Made by a program: the position numbers and the translations under genes. DNA of 64,000 nucleotides from the NCBI GenBank assembly GCA_904063045.1, contig CAJFCJ010000023.1:434001-498000 (forward strand), in the 5' to 3' direction. This document shows, piece after piece, positions 3,001 to 16,422 of the stretch. The stretch's first letter is position 1; each line of letters starts with the position of its first letter. The DNA comes from Dimorphilus gyrociliatus. Its lineage: Eukaryota > Animalia > Annelida. The notes under the pieces were generated by a model, which saw only the letters and a program-made list of their open reading frames with translations, did not search any database and was not told the DNA's origin.

Positions 3001-4642
3001 AACGCATATGCTTTCATGCGTAAAAATTCGCTTCATCATTCATCCGTTTCAAAGCAACCTAAAACTGCTTTCGACGCTGGTTCTGTCGAATCATTTAACG
3101 ACCTTGTAACTACTTATTGAACAAAGAATTTCTATTAATCTCTTTTTTTTTCTTTATTAATTTCAATTTTCAATAGAGAACCTTATAAAGAAATTTAGCT
3201 CGTATCACTTACTTAATACAATATATGCTATATACAGTTTATATTTAAATAAATACTCACAGAAATCAATTAATCCAGTAATAAACAAATGAGAAAAATG
3301 TAAAACTTAAGAGATTCATTATCTTAATAAAACTTTTTGGGAAATTCACGGTCACGTTTCGTGGTCCGACCAATCCTTCTTACCGCTTTGATGATCTCTC
3401 ATTTCCGACGTAAGTTCGGTGAGGCGCATTCAAGTCCAAGTGATAAAGAAAGAGAATGACAAGACTACTAAATAGCGCAAGTATACGAGTAGACGTTACT
3501 GGAGTAAGTAAGCAGATTTATATTTCATCATTTTCCGAGCCAAGTGTCTTTACATTGATTATCTTTTCAAATAATGACGTTATTTAAGGGGTATATAACA
3601 TTGATGGAATCGTATGATTAAATGCAGGAGATATTTTACATAATTCCTGTCGTGTTTGTCAATAGAATAAGTAAATTGATTGATGATTTTTGCTATTCTA
3701 TTTCAAACTCCATCGAAATTTAAAACCACTGTAAACTCATTTATTTTTCATAAATCTCTACTTTATCGCCTTATTCCATTCCTTATTTTACTTGAAATTA
3801 TAAGAATATACAATATGCATTTCAACTGCTTTGTAACAGTATTAAAAAGTTTTTATGCCAACTTTTGCGCTACTTCCCATTAACAAATTAAGTTAACTTT
3901 TAAAAAAAAGAAACGGAAACTAAAGTTGAGCAGTTAATGACAGGCCACAATCGATTTCGCGCTCTTTTTTTCAACTATAGACAAAGATAAATGACAATGA
4001 AGGTAATTTTACATTGATTTTACGTTCCGTTCCTTTGAAATTTGCCTGTTGAACTGTATTCCTATCACGATTAGTCACCTGACTATAAAGCTCTTTTTTT
4101 ATCATCTACTGTCAAATGTAAAGAAAAAGTTGAAGGAAGAAAGTGAGTTACAGTGAGAACGGAACATAATAAAGAAAAACACATTTGACAATGGTGAGAA
4201 GGCGATAAAAGAAAGAGAGCGAAAAAGAGACAGATTAAGGGAGCAGAAGAGTGAATAGGAAAAAGTATAGGAAGGAAGTAAGGCAGGCAAAAAAAAAACA
4301 CCTGTTATATTGATATCATCTTACGGTTGAAAACTAACAAAAAAAAGGAAAAGTAGATAGAAAGAAGGAGAGGAAGAAAGGAAGGAAGGAAGAAAAAAGA
4401 AATTTAAAAAGGGGGAAAGGTATAAAAACTATTTCTCCTCGTAGTAATACTGTAAAGGGGAAACTAGATATGAAATAAATATATCATATTCTTTCTCTTT
4501 TTCTCTTACACCTCCTTATTCTTCTTTTTTTTCTTTTTCTGTTTCTTCTCCTTCTTCTTCTTTTTCTTCTTTTTCTTCTTCTTTGCCTTCTTCATCATTC
4601 TTTCTTCTTTCTAAGTTTTTGAATCAAATTCTCATCACGACT

Positions 4643-9008: not shown

Positions 9009-9237
9009 GCGTATTACATGAAGCTTAAAGGAATTGAGGAGACGAGAAGTTCTTGGGCTCTTACTCTGCTCAGTTTATCGGAATGTGTATCTTATATTCT
9101 TGCTTCCTTCTTTGGTGACTATTTAAAAGGCAAACTTGTCTATGCTAATGTCATATCGGCAGCAGCTTTAAGTCTCATTTGTATACTTTGGCCTATGCTA
9201 GACTTTTCTTATTCGATGATACTCTTCACATCACTCA
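9009..9237 (+). CDS. SLC16 transporter coding exon 4
   Basis: tttttcag|GCG TAT TAC ATG...FTSL A|GTAAGT; hydrophobic TM8-10, phases 0 to 1. Confidence 0.9.
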
Positions 9238-9316
9238 GTAAGTACACTTATGTTCCACTTTGTAATTAGACAAAGAAAATAATTGATTTTTCTTCCACTT
9301 GTCTTTTTTCCTCCAG

Positions 9317-9457
9317 CTATGGGAGGCTTTTTAGGTTTGACTATTGTATACACTTACGCCGCTTCCGGTGAAGTTACTAAACTTCCTATCGATGTTGCAT
9401 GGTCGTTTACGAATTTGTGGTCTGGTGTTGGCATACTTTTGGGTCCATTTTTCTCTG
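9317..9457 (+). CDS. SLC16 transporter coding exon 5
   Basis: ttttttcctccag| then TMGGFLGLTIV...GVGILLGPFFS G|GTAAGT, phases 1 to 1. Confidence 0.9.
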
Positions 9458-9577
9458 GTAAGTACAGTAGCTTCGGCATTAAATAATTGAATAACTAGTG
9501 CTGCCTTCTGCTGTTCCAATATAAATATTATACTTTATTTATCTAACGGAAAAGTTAATTGAATTCGTTGAAAATAG

Positions 9578-9903
9578 GAGCTATTTACGACATCCGACGG
9601 AACTACGACGATGTCTTCTACGTAGTTGGAGCCCTATTTGTTCTAGATGCTCTATTATTTGGTGGAATTGTCGTTTTGCAAAAGTGGAGGGAAGCCCATC
9701 CTCCTCCGGAGGCTATACCGCTGGAAAAGAGAAAATTCAGTTCGGTCTCGGAAACTGAAATGGCAGCAACAACAACTACAGCCGAATACGGTAGTATAGA
9801 AAAGCCTGCCGGACCATTAGACGCTCCTAGAAGACCTCCAAGTACCTACAAGTTGAAAGAAGAAGAATCGAATAGAGAGGAAGATTACTTTAGAGTAAAT
9901 TAA
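9578..9903 (+). CDS. SLC16 transporter coding exon 6 (last)
   Basis: aaaatag| then GAIYDIRRNYDDVFYVVGALF (MCT GxLYDxxxxY motif before TM12), tail ends YFRVN-TAA. The acceptor has a weak pyrimidine tract but the phase fits. Confidence 0.88.
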
Positions 9904-11661
9904 TGGAAAGAATGATTTTAGAAGTGTTAAAATGTTAGATGGTTAAGGATTTTAAATTAATTAATTGTAATATATATAAATATATTAAGACTATTAATTA
10001 AAATATTGATATCTGTAAGAAGTAAGGAGATAAAAAGATACAAAAAAAATCATTAGGCTTTCGTTTTTGTTCATAATTGTAAATGTACGAGGAAAAAAAA
10101 AGGAAAAACATGGAATGCTTGTGTTTATTTAAATGAAGGGATGAACATATAAAAGAAAAACAAATAAAAAAGTTTCGTTTCTATCTTATCGACGGATACG
10201 ATTCAAAAAAAAAAACAGAGGAGATCTATAATGAATTTATCATAGTGGATGGGTAATAATCGATCGATTACTGTTTAATTTTATCCATTGTAAATCATGC
10301 GGCTTATCGATTGATTAAACAAATCTATAATGAATCATTTCCCTTTCTCTCCGAGTCTTCCTTTTCCGTTCAAGAAAACTAAGAGCTAGGAACAGAATAA
10401 CAGAGATCGAAATAGACCAACAATATTACATTTATTCTATTTTTCCAATTCGTATCCCATCCGTAAAATACTCCATTCCGATAGTCGTTTCAATGATAAA
10501 ACGTTTCGAGATGACCAACATCAATTTTGTTAATCCGACCATAATCCGCTCTCTTCCCAGCAGCTAAAGCTATTAAGATTATATAATTACGATTGACTGC
10601 ATTATACAATATGTTAAAAAGAGGGAAAAAATGTGTTTATCCCTTCGACTTTAATGCTCTCAACCGTTGAAAATATATTGTAAAAGTCTTATAGCAGTAT
10701 AGTAAAAAATTTAATAAAATATTTGTCAATTCTCCGTTAATTATTTTAATTAATTATCTAATTAGTTAAATATATGACAGGTAATCCTTTCATTCTGTAT
10801 TCATTTCAACCGTTTTTTCGATAACTATTCATCCGAAATTTCAACGATTTTACGCCATCTTGCGGGTTTTAAATAGTTTACCCTAGTGGGCAATAATTGA
10901 AAGTGAAGGAGAGAAAAGGCAACGGAAGAAAACGTTGGAGAGATTGAGCGACGTAGACAGAAAAAAGCGGAAGGGGCTTATTAAAAAATTAAGAAGGAAA
11001 GGAGTTTAATTATGTAAAAAGTTGAGTGATAAATTGAGAAATTTCAATGTGTTTAGATTGAAAAGTATTCGAAAGGCTTGGGGTGTGAACCGTTCCATTA
11101 TTAAATCAATCAATCTATTGATTGAGATCTTATTTAACGATAAGCATCAAGGTAAAGCATCCAGGACAATTTAATAAAATGATTAATAAACTTGTTTATA
11201 TTAGACGATTATTATGTCAATTTTCCAAATTAAACATTTCTCACTTTTCCTACGATAACAGAAGATTTATATATAGAAGGAAAACCAGCTAGTTTATGAC
11301 TAAATAAGAGAGAAAGAGAACAGAGAAAGATTTGAAACAATAAGATAAAAGTTTAGGGAAAACTATCTGCTTGTTTAATCAGTTAAAAAGAGGTCATAGT
11401 GGCAAATCTTAGAGATTGGGCCATGCTCTAGAGTATTAAAAGAATCTATGCACGGAGAAGAATTAATTTTTTAAGAAAAGAGTGACACCTGTAGGCGGAT
11501 AAGTAGGCCTAAATTACAAGCATAAAAGGCGTTGTCCCAAGCAGTAGTGGCGTTATTTTGCGTACGTTGACGGAAAAAGTTTGTTTCATATATTTCCTAA
11601 ACAAACTTAATCGTTGAAAAACGATTCTCTTTTTTTCTTTTTTCAACTGACAGACAAGATT

Positions 11662-11764
11662 ATGAAATCGAATTACGCTCTGTTCGTCACCTTAATCTGC
11701 TGTTGCGTAATTGTTGAACAATTCGCTCAAGAATATTCACCGGACGGTTATAAATTCGACGATG
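11662..11764 (+). CDS. Neuropeptide precursor exon 1: shared signal peptide MKSNYALFVTLICCCVIVEQFA-QEYSPDGYKFDD
   Basis: Basic N-terminus plus hydrophobic core. Preceded by acceptor ttttttcaactgacag (ends 11653). Donor GAT G|GTTTGA is phase 1 and matches both downstream exons. An alternative phase-1 donor at 11747 is possible. Confidence 0.85.
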
Positions 11765-12785
11765 GTTTGATATTTTCCAATTCTTTGTTGTATTGCTTTA
11801 TATTTTCCGGCTTTCACTTCTTTCAAATTACGCTTACGAAAGTACGCTTTTGCAGCTGTCGATTAGACTGTCGCTGACAACATTTGTCCGTTTATGAGCT
11901 TTAGCTTTTTAGCTTAATATCTATCCAATAGAAATATATATATATATATATATATACATATCTTTTTTTATACATAAGTATACGTATTCATAACGCCTAT
12001 GCTTATACATATATGTATACAAAAAAGGATTATATACTACCTATGAAGGGATAATAGTAAAAGAGTTTAATCTCTTTAATTAGCTTCTCAACGATGCTGA
12101 AAAGTATTTAAAAAACAGTCGATTAATCTTAAACAAATTTTCAATTATCAGTTAGATGTAAAAAGATATTCTAATAAGTTGTAATATTAAAATATCAAAT
12201 CATATTCAATCGAATGGAATGAATTAAAAGTCTGCTTGAATTTCAAAAATAATTAACTTTTGAGAAAATAATATACAAACACTGAAAGAAAACAGATAGA
12301 AAGAAAGAAAGAAAGAGAGGTGAAGTTTGTTATTGTTGGATTTAATATCTTTATAAATATAACATATTTAAGTTTTCCCTCTTAACCCTTAAAATATTTC
12401 ATATTTTTCATTCTTTCGTTCCCCTCCCTCTTTTCTATATCTTCCTCCTCTTCTTCCTTCTCCTGTTCAGTCTGTTCTTTGTTATTGCTCCTCCTCTCAC
12501 TTTATTAATGCTATTAAGGCAAGAAAACGTAATTAATCATATTAAGTTTATTCTACTTCGTATTCGACTTAAAAAAGTATACATTTAAGTTGATAGCAAT
12601 CTTTATATAGATCAAATGAGCGAATAAGTGTACATACATATTCATATATGTACTTGTATATATATATTATTCATGATCTACACAGTACATACGTAAGCAT
12701 CTTTCCATTTTCTTAGCAATCTATACTAGCTGGGGAGCAATTTATATTAAAAATGTATGTATAAGTATCTATATATGTATATTTA

Positions 12786-12787
<2 letters not shown>

Positions 12788-12857
<70 letters not shown>
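12788..12857. repeat. (AT)n microsatellite
   Basis: Uninterrupted AT dinucleotide run of about 70 nt in the neuropeptide intron. Similar runs near 27240-27287, 27917-27960 and 62749-62788. Confidence 0.95.
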
Positions 12858-12859
<2 letters not shown>

Positions 12860-13629
12860 TATAAATGTATATGATGTGCATGTATATATATATAGATATA
12901 TATAATTTTGCACACATACATTCATTAAGTACAATAAAGAAAATACACAGTATCTACAATATATGCTGTATATTAATCTATTGTACACAAGAATATATTC
13001 TATTTATGAAAACTGGTTTTTGTTTGGAATCACAACGAATGAAGTTGATCACTGACAAACTCTTTGATATTCATTTATATACATATATATTTATATACAT
13101 ATATATATATATCAACGATATATTTTGCTGTTTGGTTATTGAGATCGATTTCATTCTGCTCTATTTTATAATTTGTTTAACTTAATTTATCTTCAATTTT
13201 ATTTCCACCAGCTAAACCTATACATGTTTGCTTTTCCGCTATTTCTTTTTCATAGTTTTATCTCTTTTCACTTGGCTTTTATAAGAGATAAAATTGAGAT
13301 TGGAATCAGTGGAAAGACTTTATTGTTTTCAAAACCGCTTGCTCTCCTTCATTTTTCATTTTCTTTATTTCGCTGCTTGTATCTCTCTCTCTCTTTCTCT
13401 CTTTTTCTCTTGATCTATCTCTTTAGCTATCTGCTTCTGTAATCGTTCCATGATTAAATTAATAATTTAAAAAGAATAGCGCTAGATAAAATAATAATAA
13501 CAGGCGCGCAGCTTGAACGCCAGACGCGCAAAGTTATCTACCTAACGCCGCGACAGTTGCGTCAGCTGATTATCCGGCTTCAGAGTCGAGGCAAAATAGT
13601 TCGTACGATCGGCAAACGTTCTTTTGCAG

Positions 13630-13781
13630 TCGACAAACGCCGCTTGTTCGTCGGCAAGCGTCCTGATGATTATGCAGAAGATTGGCGAAAGGAAGAGAAG
13701 AGGGCTAGACAAAGGCTATTTGTCGGTCGTAGACGACAGTTATTTGTTGGCAGAAGGAGCGCTGCGGACGACATCCAGTAG
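13630..13781 (+). CDS. FVamide-type neuropeptide exon (RLFVa, ARQRLFVa, (R)QLFVa)
   Basis: cgttcttttgcag| phase 1 gives VDKR-RLFVG-KR-PDDYAEDWRKEEKR-ARQRLFVG-RR-RQLFVG-RR-SAADDIQ-TAG. Three LFV-Gly repeats with dibasic sites. Perfect donor GTGAGT at 13783. Confidence 0.9.
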
Positions 13782-14285
13782 AGTGAGTTTTAGCGAAAAT
13801 TTCTATGTCAAATCATCCTTCTTAACAATGGAAAGGGAAGCGGAGTTTGATACGAGTACTAAATCTTTTTAGCAAATTTGTTATTAGTAAAAAGAAGAGC
13901 AATCTGAAAAGTCTTTATATTAAAAGAGGAGGTTACTCTCACTCATAAATACCTTTTATTAAACATTCATCACACTAAATGGAGACTATTATTAGATTGG
14001 CTTTTCAATTGAATAATTTGTCCACAACTAAGAAGGATGGTTTGACGCGCATTACGGCAGCTTTTTATAATGCGCTGTTCCTTTCTTTCAAAAGCGCTTG
14101 GCATGCGCTTCTATAAATTTATTATATATGAATACACAACAGTATATACTGTATATAAATTAAAGTATATACGCAACTCTACAGATATTATTTTCACTCC
14201 TCTATGCTGTTTACGGCCTAGAGATCATATGTAATAGGTACAACTAATCATGTTCCTTTCGTACTAAACAATTTCATTTCGGCAG

Positions 14286-14440
14286 AAGAAAATCGCCTCT
14301 ACCGCCCAATCCTCAATAGATTCAACAAGCGATTCGATGAATTTCTAGGAAAACGCTTTTCAGAATTTATGGGAAAGAAGAAACGATTTGGTGACTTAAT
14401 GGGCGGTAAAAAACGCTTTTCGGAATTTATGGGTCGTTAA
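14286..14440 (+). CDS. TRH-type (EFLGamide/EFLamide family) neuropeptide exon, not in ORF track
   Basis: atttcatttcggcag| phase 1 gives EENRLYRPILNRFNKR-FDEFLG-KR-FSEFMG-KKKR-FGDLMGG-KKR-FSEFMG-R-TAA. Repeated F-x-E-F-(L/M)-G units with basic cleavage sites. AATAAA at 14512. Confidence 0.9.
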
Positions 14441-16422
14441 TTAACATTGTAAAAATTAACAAGTGTAAAAATAAGTAGAAAGGAAAAATATGAAAAAAAA
14501 ATGTTATGATAAATAAAAGAGAAAATTCTGTTTGTCTTAAACGTTTAGTTAAAAACAAAAGCAATTCAAAAAATTTCTTGTCTGCAAAGAATAAAACTTT
14601 TATTTGTGTGCAATAATTGAAAATAATAACATCAACAAAACAAAGAAATGATAAGGAATCATCTATGTAAAATATGTTTTTATCAATTCACTTTACTTAC
14701 TTATAATATTAATTTTTCGTGTCATGACTATTAAAGAAAATTGAATATTTCTTAGGTTCTTAGCTGCTATATATTCTAATATATAGATTTTTTTTTTTCA
14801 TTAACAAACATAATGCAAAACTTAATGGAAAGCAATTTGTTTTTCAACATGCTTTTCCTTCTTTCTTTTAGTGAAAGCATTTAAAAAAAGTCATCTTCTA
14901 GATATTAAATTTTCTTATAAAAATGACTTTCTTTCCGGTTTTTCGTAACTCTATAAGACAATTCGTAATTAATAATAGGATCATGTGGCAAATATCTTTA
15001 AAGTTATATTAATAGCTGGTTATTAAAACGAGAAAAGAAAACAGTAGACCATCTTGTTATGCATTCCTTAGTCTTGTAAGTTTCTTCTTCTTGTTTTTCT
15101 CTTTCCAGCATTCTTTCGTTTATAGGGAACAATGGATATCGCTCCTCTTTCCCTGCTTCGTAATTGTGGCATATTCATGTTTTAACGCTGTTTACATATA
15201 TTTATTGACCAATTTGAATAGCTATAGAGAGGGTGGGCAGTTATTTATCCTATTATGGCAGATTATACATTATCTACTAATGGTAGTAGCTAAGTGACTT
15301 GGAGAGGAGAAAGAGTGGGAGTAGGATAAAGGAGAAAGAACAAAGAACTTTTATAAAAGAAAAAAGAGAACGCGACGGTGAGAAGGAATTAATTAAGCGA
15401 TCCGCTTTTCCGCTATAGTAAATAAAAAAATAGATAAGAATTATCTTGATAATCGTTTGGCGGAAGCTCGTTACTAGTTCATCCCTAGTAAGCAGTTTTT
15501 CTTATGATAAACATCTATGAATCTGTGTTGTATAAAACTTGAGGATGAAAGAAAATAGAATGTAAATATTTACGTAAGCTGTATATCGCTTGCATTAATT
15601 ATGCATTGAACGGCTGTTAATTTGTGGTGTAAGTATCTGTTTAAGGAAAGGTACAGTGATATTCTTGTCATCTTTTGTCGTTCCCACAGACCTCTACATC
15701 CTATTAGCCATCCAACTTGTTTTCAGGAATTGTTATATTATAGTAGTCGTTAACAAGGACCTCCTTTCTAACTTATTACTCCCAATTGCATTAGGACATA
15801 ACCTATTCCCCCTTTTTGTATGTGATATTATATATTGCCTATATATATATATACTGTACATATATATATATACTGTATATATGTGTACAGTATATATATA
15901 TATATGTGTGTATATATATTTATGTGTACGCATAAATCACTTTGTGCTCTTTTACTCTCTCTCTTTCTCTCTCTCTTTCTCTTCTTGATTTATTCAACAA
16001 AACTGTAAAGAGAAAACGTATGGTACTAAACAGTGAATATATGGGAGATGATTACTTCAATAGAAGAAATAGAAATTATATTATTGCTTGAATGTTTAAG
16101 TATTGAAAAATGTATGAAATCAAAACTGATCGTAACGTAAAGTAGCACGAATGTAAGTATCTGATGAATTATTCCATTAAGCATGACGTTGTTATACAAG
16201 CTAATCGTAGCTTTTAAATTATTAAAAAACATCTAAATATTTATATAGAAAGTTCTCAGAAAGTCTGTTTTATAAAATACAATATCAAAATTATTTTAAA
16301 CACTCATCTAATCAAATATATTGAATTTATCTTGTTAACCAACCTATGTTTTTCTCTCTTTTATTTTTATTGCACTTATTATTTGCTAAGTAGTCGGGAA
16401 GAGGTTGGGAGTTAGAGGTAGG

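What the first reader, a model, noticed from the sequence alone, without database searches (positions are those of the whole stretch)
13776..13790. A single TAG blocks an in-frame fused FV+TRH precursor: readthrough, editing or recent nonsense change
Seen: the LFV exon (13630-13782) is 153 nt, a symmetric phase 1-1 exon. After splicing, the message reads ATC CAG TAG A|AA GAA AAT, exactly in frame with the TRH exon, so decoding the TAG gives one 136-aa precursor with both peptide sets. Inference: either an ancestral joint precursor split by a stop, or a third regulated output through stop readthrough or A-to-I editing (UAG to UIG, Trp). Frame match by chance has a 1-in-3 probability, so this is suggestive only.
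Basis: partly seen in the sequence, partly recalled or inferred. Interest (0 to 1): 0.75.

Follow-up and report, generated by a model that had tools for sequence, protein, structure and literature searches.

The report
Known two-peptide gene; ordinary stop codon
The TAG ends the FVamide version of a worm neuropeptide gene that makes its second (TRH-like) peptide set by skipping that exon, an arrangement already published for this species and its relatives, so the finding is real but not new.

Summary
The TAG (13779-13781), the A|GTGAGT donor one base later, and the frame match with the EFL-peptide exon (14286-14440) are all in the sequence. The window is the Dimorphilus gyrociliatus FVamide/EFLGamide gene: its exons match two published transcript isoforms 100%. 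One isoform is signal-peptide exon + FVamide exon, ending at this TAG. The other is signal-peptide exon + EFLG exon, made by exon skipping. The published FVamide isoform starts exon 2 at 13504, not 13630, so the exon is 279 nt (still a multiple of 3) and a read-through product would be 178 codons, not 136.

The same "FVa ORF, stop, EFLGa region" layout was described in Capitella (2011) and Platynereis (2013). Stop-codon read-through was proposed for Platynereis, although its cDNA has two in-frame stops. In the oyster the downstream region is out of frame and alternative splicing is documented.

Here I found no leaky stop context (UAG-A), no downstream RNA structure and no editing duplex. The stop is ancient, not recent.

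Best reading: an ordinary terminator in a cassette exon, with the frame match a legacy or chance (1 in 3). Regulated read-through is not excluded (about 7%). The scan had also noted the cassette-exon layout on this same window (s1-080235).

The parts
11662..11764 (+). Exon 1 coding part: start ATG, signal peptide and short N-terminal piece (MKSNYALFVTLICCCVIVEQFAQEYSPDGYKFDD plus the first base of the next codon). Phase-1 donor G|GTTTGA.
   Evidence: Identical to the N-terminus of both published isoforms.
13504..13782 (+). Exon 2, the FVamide cassette exon (279 nt, phase 1-1). It encodes a degenerate copy (..IVRTIGKR) and three xLFVG(K/R)R copies, then SAADDIQ, then TAG.
   Evidence: The exact match to the published FVamide isoform i1 fixes the acceptor at 13503|13504. 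phmmer hits to FVamide/PRQFVamide precursors reach E=1e-29.
13630..13630 (+). It is in the same frame, would give a 153-nt exon, and is not documented by any transcript.
   Evidence: The published isoform reads straight through it as ..SFAVDKR...
13779..13781 (+). The TAG stop that ends the FVamide precursor. It is the last full codon of exon 2, one base before the donor.
   Evidence: The published FVamide protein ends ...SAADDIQ*.
13783..13788 (+). Donor site GTGAGT of intron 2.
   Evidence: [quoted passage not shown]
14286..14440 (+). Exon 3 coding part (phase-1 acceptor cag|AA). It encodes the spacer ENRLYRPILNRFNKR, then FDEFLGKR, FSEFMGKKKR, FGDLMGGKKR and FSEFMGR, then TAA. These are EFL(G)amide/fulicin/TRH-type peptides.
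   Evidence: Identical to the published EFLG-like isoform i7. 74% identical to the EFLGG exon of L012. 148 of 155 nt identical to a relative whose introns do not align.
14512..14517 (+). First AATAAA after the TAA, a candidate polyadenylation signal.
   Evidence: It is a consensus match only, in AT-rich sequence.

Best explanation
This is the Dimorphilus gyrociliatus FVamide/EFLGamide gene, known in molluscs as MIP/fulicin. It is a three-exon proneuropeptide gene in which one signal-peptide exon is spliced to either of two peptide exons.

Including exon 2 (13504-13782) gives a 127-residue FVamide precursor. It terminates at TAG 13779-13781, and exon 3 then serves as 3' UTR. Skipping exon 2 joins exon 1 directly to exon 3, both phase 1, and gives an 86-residue EFL(G)amide (TRH-type) precursor. 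The TAG is an ordinary terminator.

Inference, not shown: the stop's position one base before the donor keeps it within the distance from the last exon junction that escapes nonsense-mediated decay. With only one base between stop and donor, there is almost no room for frame-shifting indels. The frame continuity into exon 3 is therefore best read as a legacy of an all-phase-1, once-continuous or tandemly built precursor, or simply as the 1-in-3 chance outcome.

Shown: the sequence features and the identity to both published isoforms. Inferred: use of the 13782 donor, the decay-avoidance rationale and the legacy of frame.
For: 1. Gene identity. Exon translations are identical to the two isoforms listed for D. 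gyrociliatus in the supplement of PMC7854359. TRINITY_GG_9906_c2_g1_i7 'EFLG-like' equals exon 1 + exon 3. Isoform _i1 'FVamide' equals exon 1 + exon 2 ending DDIQ*. The authors remark that they are 'on the same transcript ... similar to P. dumerilii FV/EFLG'. Assembly size and contig number also fit.
2. Copy number. Both peptide exons are single copy in the genome.
3. Oyster. [quoted passage not shown] 4. Unnamed annelid-like genome (L012/L017). An FV exon (360-1937, 1578 nt) and an EFLGG exon both have phase-1 acceptors, so skipping would work there too.
5. Platynereis. Mass spectrometry found the C-terminal peptide ending at the first stop (SAEVRQPADASVSSQ), so termination there is real.
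6. No read-through or editing signals here. The context is UAG-A. Exon 3 folds no better than shuffles (z -1.14; first 80 nt z +1.06). The fold around the TAG has z +0.22. The best duplex partner for the TAG segment is -26.5 kcal/mol, against a background of -27.2 +/- 3.9.
Against: - Conzelmann et al. 2013 found no signal-peptide+EFLGa transcript in Platynereis Illumina reads. They saw EFLGa immunoreactivity in a subset of FVa neurons and proposed neuron-specific read-through.
- Frame continuity across the stop or stops is seen in Platynereis (cDNA), predicted in L012 and present here: three annelid lineages.
- I could not inspect RNA reads, so use of the 13782 donor, the ratio of isoforms and the absence of A-to-G changes at 13780 rest on published assemblies and on sequence consensus.
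Confidence: 0.85

Rival explanations
1. Regulated, possibly neuron-specific, translational read-through of the TAG adds the EFL(G)amide peptides to the FVamide precursor. This would give a third output: a 178-codon fused precursor and co-release of both peptide sets, alongside exon skipping.
For: - The frame is continuous with a single stop.
- The same mechanism was proposed in print for the Platynereis orthologue, from antibody staining and the lack of alternative transcripts, and is cited by read-through specialists.
- The frame is also continuous in Platynereis cDNA and in the predicted L012 mRNA.
- Exon 3 is strongly conserved from its first codon.
Against: - An exon-skipped transcript already explains EFLG peptide production here, and it also explains the conservation of exon 3.
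- A purine after UAG is a strong-termination context rather than a leaky one such as UGA-C or UGA-CUAG (established knowledge; context dependence noted).
- There is no stable structure downstream.
- Platynereis and L012 each carry two in-frame stops, which would multiply the penalty.
- The oyster region is out of frame.
- Three of four lineages in frame is not significant (p about 0.11 at 1/3 each), and the lineages are not independent.
Confidence: 0.07
2. A-to-I editing of the middle A of UAG (13780) recodes the stop to Trp (UIG) in some cells and fuses the two precursors.
For: U-A-G is a favourable nearest-neighbour context for ADAR enzymes (established knowledge). The frame is continuous.
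Against: - No double-stranded partner was found. The local fold is no better than shuffles (z +0.22).
- The best duplex within the pre-mRNA is average for exon segments.
- The only inverted repeats nearby are TA microsatellites.
- The published assembled transcript keeps the stop.
- In Platynereis and L012 two stops (in L012, TAG and TAA) would all need editing.
Confidence: 0.02
3. Exon 2 is mainly an alternative terminal exon. FVamide mRNAs run past 13782 into intron 2 and are polyadenylated there, for example after ATTAAA at about 13919 or 13958. The GTGAGT donor is then little used, and the frame relation to exon 3 is irrelevant.
For: ATTAAA motifs lie 140-180 nt after the TAG. The unspliced reading meets another in-frame TAG after three codons.
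Against: - Such hexamers are no more frequent than chance in this AT-rich DNA.
- The donor A|GTGAGT is close to consensus.
- The genome paper places FVamide and EFLG-like 'on the same transcript'.
- The Platynereis cDNA and the oyster contig carry both regions on one mRNA.
Confidence: 0.06

Closest known systems
Platynereis dumerilii FVamide/EFLGamide proneuropeptide (GenBank JF811327; Conzelmann et al. 2013, PMC3890597)
   Same: One mRNA carries a signal peptide and an FVamide ORF, then a stop, then an in-frame EFLG-peptide region with no Met or signal peptide of its own. The peptide families are the same (xxFVamide; FSEFLG-type). The authors already proposed stop-codon read-through.
   Different: Platynereis has many more copies (338-residue FVa ORF) and two in-frame stops separated by 8 codons. 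No exon-skipped transcript was found there. Dimorphilus has a miniature gene (3-4 FV copies, 4 EFL copies), a single TAG one base from the junction, and a documented exon-skipped isoform. Most of its EFL copies end in one Gly (EFL/EFM-amide) rather than GG (EFLG-amide).
Crassostrea gigas MIP (PxFV/Iamide)/fulicin gene LOC105328755 (PMC8398477), and the Capitella teleta EFLGamide gene as cited there and in PMC3890597
   Same: One gene and one signal-peptide exon. A cassette FV-type exon has its own stop, with a downstream fulicin/EFL exon. Exon skipping gives the fulicin/EFL precursor. An alternative 3' splice site gives long and short FV forms, which parallels the 13504 and 13630 acceptors here.
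   Different: In the oyster the fulicin region is out of frame behind the MIP ORF. Here it is in frame.
Hemipteran and locust Prohormone-4/EFLamide gene (PMC7294237)
   Same: The TRH-type EFLamide exon is reached by alternative splicing from the 5' exons of a gene that otherwise makes a different prohormone.
   Different: The partner is Proh-4, not an FVamide precursor. That arrangement is described as an insect novelty, and no stop or frame issue is reported.
Programmed stop-codon read-through genes of Drosophila, Anopheles and human (Jungreis et al. 2016, PMC5100048)
   Same: A conserved coding-like region lies in frame after a stop.
   Different: Those genes typically show leaky contexts (UGA-C) or downstream RNA structures, and no alternative route to translate the downstream region. 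Here the context is UAG-A, there is no structure, and splicing provides an alternative route.

Membership tests
Lophotrochozoan bipartite FVamide(MIP)/EFLGamide(fulicin) proneuropeptide gene | N-terminal signal-peptide exon followed by multiple xxFVG(K/R)(K/R) copies | tested here: met
   phmmer hits to FV-amide/PRQFV-amide precursors, including Spirobranchus FV-amide and Elysia PRQFV-amide.
Lophotrochozoan bipartite FVamide(MIP)/EFLGamide(fulicin) proneuropeptide gene | Downstream region on the same gene encoding (F/Y)S(E/D)F(L/M)G-type peptides, with no start codon or signal peptide of its own | tested here: met
   BLASTP gives 74% identity to the EFLGG exon that follows an FV exon in L012.
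Lophotrochozoan bipartite FVamide(MIP)/EFLGamide(fulicin) proneuropeptide gene | Stop codon closing the FV ORF just before the junction with the EFL region | tested here: met
   TAG 13779-13781, one base before the donor. Same layout in Platynereis and L012.
Lophotrochozoan bipartite FVamide(MIP)/EFLGamide(fulicin) proneuropeptide gene | Two mRNA isoforms sharing the signal-peptide exon (cassette exon included or skipped) | not testable with these tools
   No RNA reads are available here. The published Trinity isoforms i1 and i7 match the window's exons exactly. Phase-1 compatibility was checked in the sequence.
Programmed stop-codon read-through | Leaky stop context (such as UGA-C, UGA-CUAG or UAG-CARYYA) | tested here: not met
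   The spliced context is UAG-AAA-GAA and the unspliced one is UAG-AGU. The list of leaky contexts comes from established knowledge.
Programmed stop-codon read-through | Stable RNA structure shortly downstream of the stop | tested here: not met
   Exon 3 fold z -1.14; first 80 nt z +1.06.
Programmed stop-codon read-through | In-frame, protein-like conservation downstream that no other transcript explains | tested here: not met
   Exon 3 is conserved, but it is ordinary coding sequence in the exon-skipped isoform.
Programmed stop-codon read-through | Direct evidence of translation past the stop (ribosome footprints, junction peptide) | not testable with these tools
   No such data are reachable. 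In Platynereis, mass spectrometry found only the peptide ending at the first stop.
A-to-I recoding site (UAG to UIG) | Edited adenosine lies in a double-stranded region formed with a complementary sequence | tested here: not met
A-to-I recoding site (UAG to UIG) | RNA-DNA difference (A to G) at the site | not testable with these tools
   Only the published assembled protein is available, and it ends at the stop. Low-level editing cannot be excluded.

The most novel reading that the evidence does not exclude
Annelid FVa/EFLGa genes keep the EFLG exon in frame behind the FVamide stop or stops (Dimorphilus, Platynereis, the L012 species) because a low-level, cell-specific read-through is selected in addition to exon skipping. 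Some FVamide neurons would then co-release TRH-type peptides from one fused precursor. With a single TAG one base from the junction, Dimorphilus would be the simplest system in which to demonstrate the mechanism proposed in 2013.
Probability: 0.07. Interest if true: 0.55.

Novelty: already known. Interest (0 to 1): 0.2.

Why it matters
The gene is a clear example of one signal peptide serving two neuropeptide families. One of them is the protostome counterpart of TRH. The layout is conserved from molluscs to annelids.

The useful point for specialists is modest. In Dimorphilus the exon-skipped transcript exists, and the intron phases show that the same skipping would work in other annelids. 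The unverified 2013 read-through proposal for Platynereis may therefore simply reflect a rare isoform missed by short reads.

If read-through were real, it would be a rare case of translational recoding that selects a neuron's transmitter content. Nothing in this sequence argues for that.

Tried and rejected
**Searches for the orthologous codon in the nearest relative**
- Genomic contigs L003-L006 (Logan runs SRR23372216, SRR23372228, SRR23372229, SRR31984831) carry exon 3 at 94% protein identity. They start only about 250 nt upstream of it, so exon 2 is missing.
- Word searches with the exon 2 frame and the exon 1 frame found nothing. The relative's stop codon could not be read.

**Searches for window-encoded proteins or transcripts**
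- None was found in the protein collections.
- This fits the published list, where this gene has no DgyrP gene-model number.

**Contigs for other FVamide homologues**
- L007-L010, L011 and L013 have no EFL-type exon within the DNA available.
- L014 is a gastropod-type single ORF. P0003's contig returned no DNA.
- These are uninformative, not negative.

**Other checks**
- Pfam has no family for either exon.
- The bacterial promoter/terminator scan is irrelevant to a eukaryotic gene.
- Recent nonsense mutation is rejected, because the stop-separated layout is shared with Platynereis, Capitella, the oyster and L012.
- A reassigned TAG codon or selenocysteine/pyrrolysine-type recoding was considered. 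It was not pursued: TAG is not a Sec codon, and animals are not known to use pyrrolysine (own knowledge).

Exons were searched and folded one by one by reference, and lengths of joined products were obtained by arithmetic only.
- Nothing in the window or the fetched loci looked human.

Full report
**1. What is in the sequence**

The region is AT-rich animal DNA, about 30% G+C. Reading 11400-15700 gives a three-exon gene on the + strand.

- **Exon 1.** It starts at ATG 11662 and encodes MKSNYALFVTLICCCVIVEQFAQEYSPDGYKFDD. It ends after 11764 with one base of the next codon, at the donor G|GTTTGA.
- **Exon 2.** The frame that ends at 13781 encodes ...DKRRLFVGKR...QRLFVGRR RQLFVGRR SAADDIQ, then TAG (13779-13781), then A|GTGAGT.
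- **Exon 3.** It starts after tttcggcag| at 14286. After two bases it reads ENRLYRPILNRFNKR FDEFLGKR FSEFMGKKKR FGDLMGGKKR FSEFMGR, then TAA at 14438-14440.

The spliced reading ATC CAG TAG A|AA GAA AAT is in frame, with one stop in between.

**2. Identity of the gene and the genome**

The window is contig 23 of a 77.9-Mb assembly in 349 contigs. This fits the roughly 350 scaffolds of the Dimorphilus gyrociliatus genome paper (PMC7854359).

That paper's list of neuropeptide precursors (supplementary file) holds two isoforms of one Trinity gene.

- **TRINITY_GG_9906_c2_g1_i7, 'EFLG-like'.** It is letter for letter exon 1 + exon 3.
- **TRINITY_GG_9906_c2_g1_i1, 'FVamide'.** It is exon 1 + a longer exon 2 ending ...SAADDIQ*.

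Translation of 13506-13781 reproduces the exon 2 part of i1 exactly. This places the acceptor at aataacag|GC, 13503|13504. Both lengths are multiples of 3, so the phase argument survives. A fused product would be 103 + 279 + 152 nt = 178 codons, not 136.

The authors annotated both entries 'on the same transcript ... similar to P. dumerilii FV/EFLG'. Both peptide exons are single copy in the genome.

**3. Family relations tested here**

- **Exon 2.** phmmer against 1.84 billion representative proteins gave 22 hits. Nearly all are long multi-copy xxFVG(K/R)(K/R) precursors, with a best E of 1e-29.
- **Named members.** They include the Spirobranchus 'FV-amide precursor' and the Elysia and Plakobranchus 'PRQFV-amide' precursors.
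- **Exon 3.** It is 74% identical to an EFLGG-peptide exon that lies 1.3 kb behind the FV exon of the best hit, on contig L012.
- **Pfam.** It has no model for either exon.

**4. What is already published about this layout**

- **Platynereis (Conzelmann et al. [quoted passage not shown] The authors say a similar structure had been described in Capitella. They found no alternative transcript. [quoted passage not shown]
- **Platynereis sequence detail.** Their sequence file shows two in-frame stops (...SVSSQ*SDASLRAQ*AIPV...). Their mass spectrometry found the peptide that ends at the first stop.
- **Read-through literature.** Jungreis et al. 2016 cite this proposal.
- **Pacific oyster (PMC8398477).** One gene makes long and short MIP (PxFV/Iamide) precursors and a fulicin (EFL-type) precursor. 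[quoted passage not shown] In the MIP transcript the fulicin region lies out of frame in the 3' UTR.
- **Insects (PMC7294237).** EFLamide is likewise reached by alternative splicing, there from the Proh-4 gene.

**5. Independent comparative check**

L012 and L017 come from Logan runs ERR14368248 and ERR14368249. They are the same species and differ by 1 nt across the 1.8-kb region compared.

| Feature in L012 | Position | Note |
|---|---|---|
| FV exon acceptor | tag\|AT, exon starts at 360 | phase 1 |
| First stop | TAG 1895-1897 | ends the FV ORF |
| Second in-frame stop | TAA 1913-1915 | 5 codons after the first |
| Donor | AG\|GCAAGT after 1937 | the only strong donor in the next 200 nt; phase 1; exon length 1578 nt, a multiple of 3 |
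| EFLGG exon acceptor | cag\|AT at 3217\|3218 | phase 1 |

Two things follow.

- Skipping the FV exon would join a phase-1 signal-peptide exon to the EFLG exon in frame, as in Dimorphilus.
- The predicted full mRNA is in frame through two stops, as in the Platynereis cDNA.

Frame continuity is thus seen in three annelid lineages and not in the oyster. At 1 in 3 per lineage, three of four gives p of about 0.11, and the lineages share ancestry. This is not evidence of selection.

Some sacoglossan gastropod precursors carry RLFVGKR copies and SREFVGKR/PREFLGKR copies in one ORF (P0012). That is compatible with a once-continuous precursor.

**6. Tests of read-through and editing at this TAG**

- **Stop context.** It is UAG-A (spliced UAG AAA GAA; unspliced UAG AGU GAG UUU UAG). 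From established knowledge this is not one of the leaky contexts.
- **Downstream structure.** Exon 3 folds no better than shuffles (z -1.14). Its first 80 nt give z +1.06.
- **Local fold for editing.** The 201 nt around the TAG fold at z +0.22.
- **Editing partner.** Inverted repeats nearby are only TA microsatellites. The best duplex the TAG segment can form anywhere in the pre-mRNA is -26.5 kcal/mol, against -27.2 +/- 3.9 for other exon segments.
- **Transcript evidence.** The published transcript-derived protein keeps the stop.

**7. Conservation of exon 3**

A related genome (contigs L003-L006) has exon 3 with 7 differences in 155 nt. The flanking intron and 3' UTR do not align. Three of the four peptide copies and the spacer are identical. 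Only the third copy differs (FGDLMGG against LGGLLGG). This conservation is expected, because exon 3 is ordinary coding sequence in the skipped isoform.

I could not reach that relative's exon 1 or exon 2.

**8. Conclusion**

The TAG is the normal terminator of the FVamide isoform of a known bipartite gene. The TRH-type peptides are made from the exon-skipped isoform.

The stop sits one base from the junction here, and 40 nt from it in L012. This fits avoidance of nonsense-mediated decay (inference). It also leaves little room for frame drift, so the frame match is best seen as legacy or chance.

| Reading | Probability |
|---|---|
| Ordinary terminator in a cassette exon | about 0.85 |
| Regulated read-through | about 0.07 |
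| Exon 2 used mainly as a terminal exon | about 0.06 |
| A-to-I editing | about 0.02 |

A recent nonsense mutation is rejected.

**9. Procedural note**

The spliced model was searched and folded exon by exon, by reference. The joined sequence was never built or submitted, and product lengths were computed by arithmetic. No contig looked human. No step needed referral.

Noticed in passing
window 13504-13629: The transcript-supported 5' part of exon 2 encodes ...RLQSRGKIVRTIGKRSFAV. The stretch IVRTIG-KR aligns with xRFVGKR units of the Spirobranchus FV-amide precursor. It looks like a degenerate extra copy that could give an ..RTI-amide peptide. An internal acceptor at 13630 would remove it, which parallels the long and short MIP forms reported in the oyster.
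   Followed up: partly
window 14286-14440 versus L003:249-403: Exon 3 is 95% identical at the nucleotide level to a relative whose intron and 3' UTR do not align at all. Only about 3 changes are synonymous. Synonymous sites look more conserved than expected, perhaps because of splicing-enhancer constraint on an alternatively used exon.
   Followed up: no
window 11662-14440: In the published precursor list this gene has no DgyrP gene-model number. No window-encoded product appears in the protein collections. It seems to be missing from the genome's gene annotation.
   Followed up: partly
L012:360-3563 (Logan ERR14368248; L017 is the same species): An unnamed annelid-like genome carries a full FVa/EFLGa gene. 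Its predicted intron is GC-AG (AG|GCAAGT), and two in-frame stops (TAG, TAA) lie between the FV ORF and the junction.
   Followed up: partly
P0012 (Plakobranchus ocellatus 'prqfv-amide'), P0004, P0010, P0014: Sacoglossan gastropod PRQFV-amide precursors hold RLFVGKR copies and, further along the same ORF, runs of SREFVGKR and one PREFLGKR. FV-type and EFV/EFL-type units thus sit in one reading frame.
   Followed up: no
window 12780-12860 and 13080-13112: Long (TA)n and TA-rich microsatellites lie in intron 1. They dominate every inverted-repeat search of the locus.
   Followed up: no
window 9018-9903: Open frames upstream on the + strand look like exons of a multi-pass membrane transporter, with hydrophobic stretches and a C-terminal tail ending ...EEDYFRVN. 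This is the 5' neighbour of the neuropeptide gene. It was not analysed.
   Followed up: no
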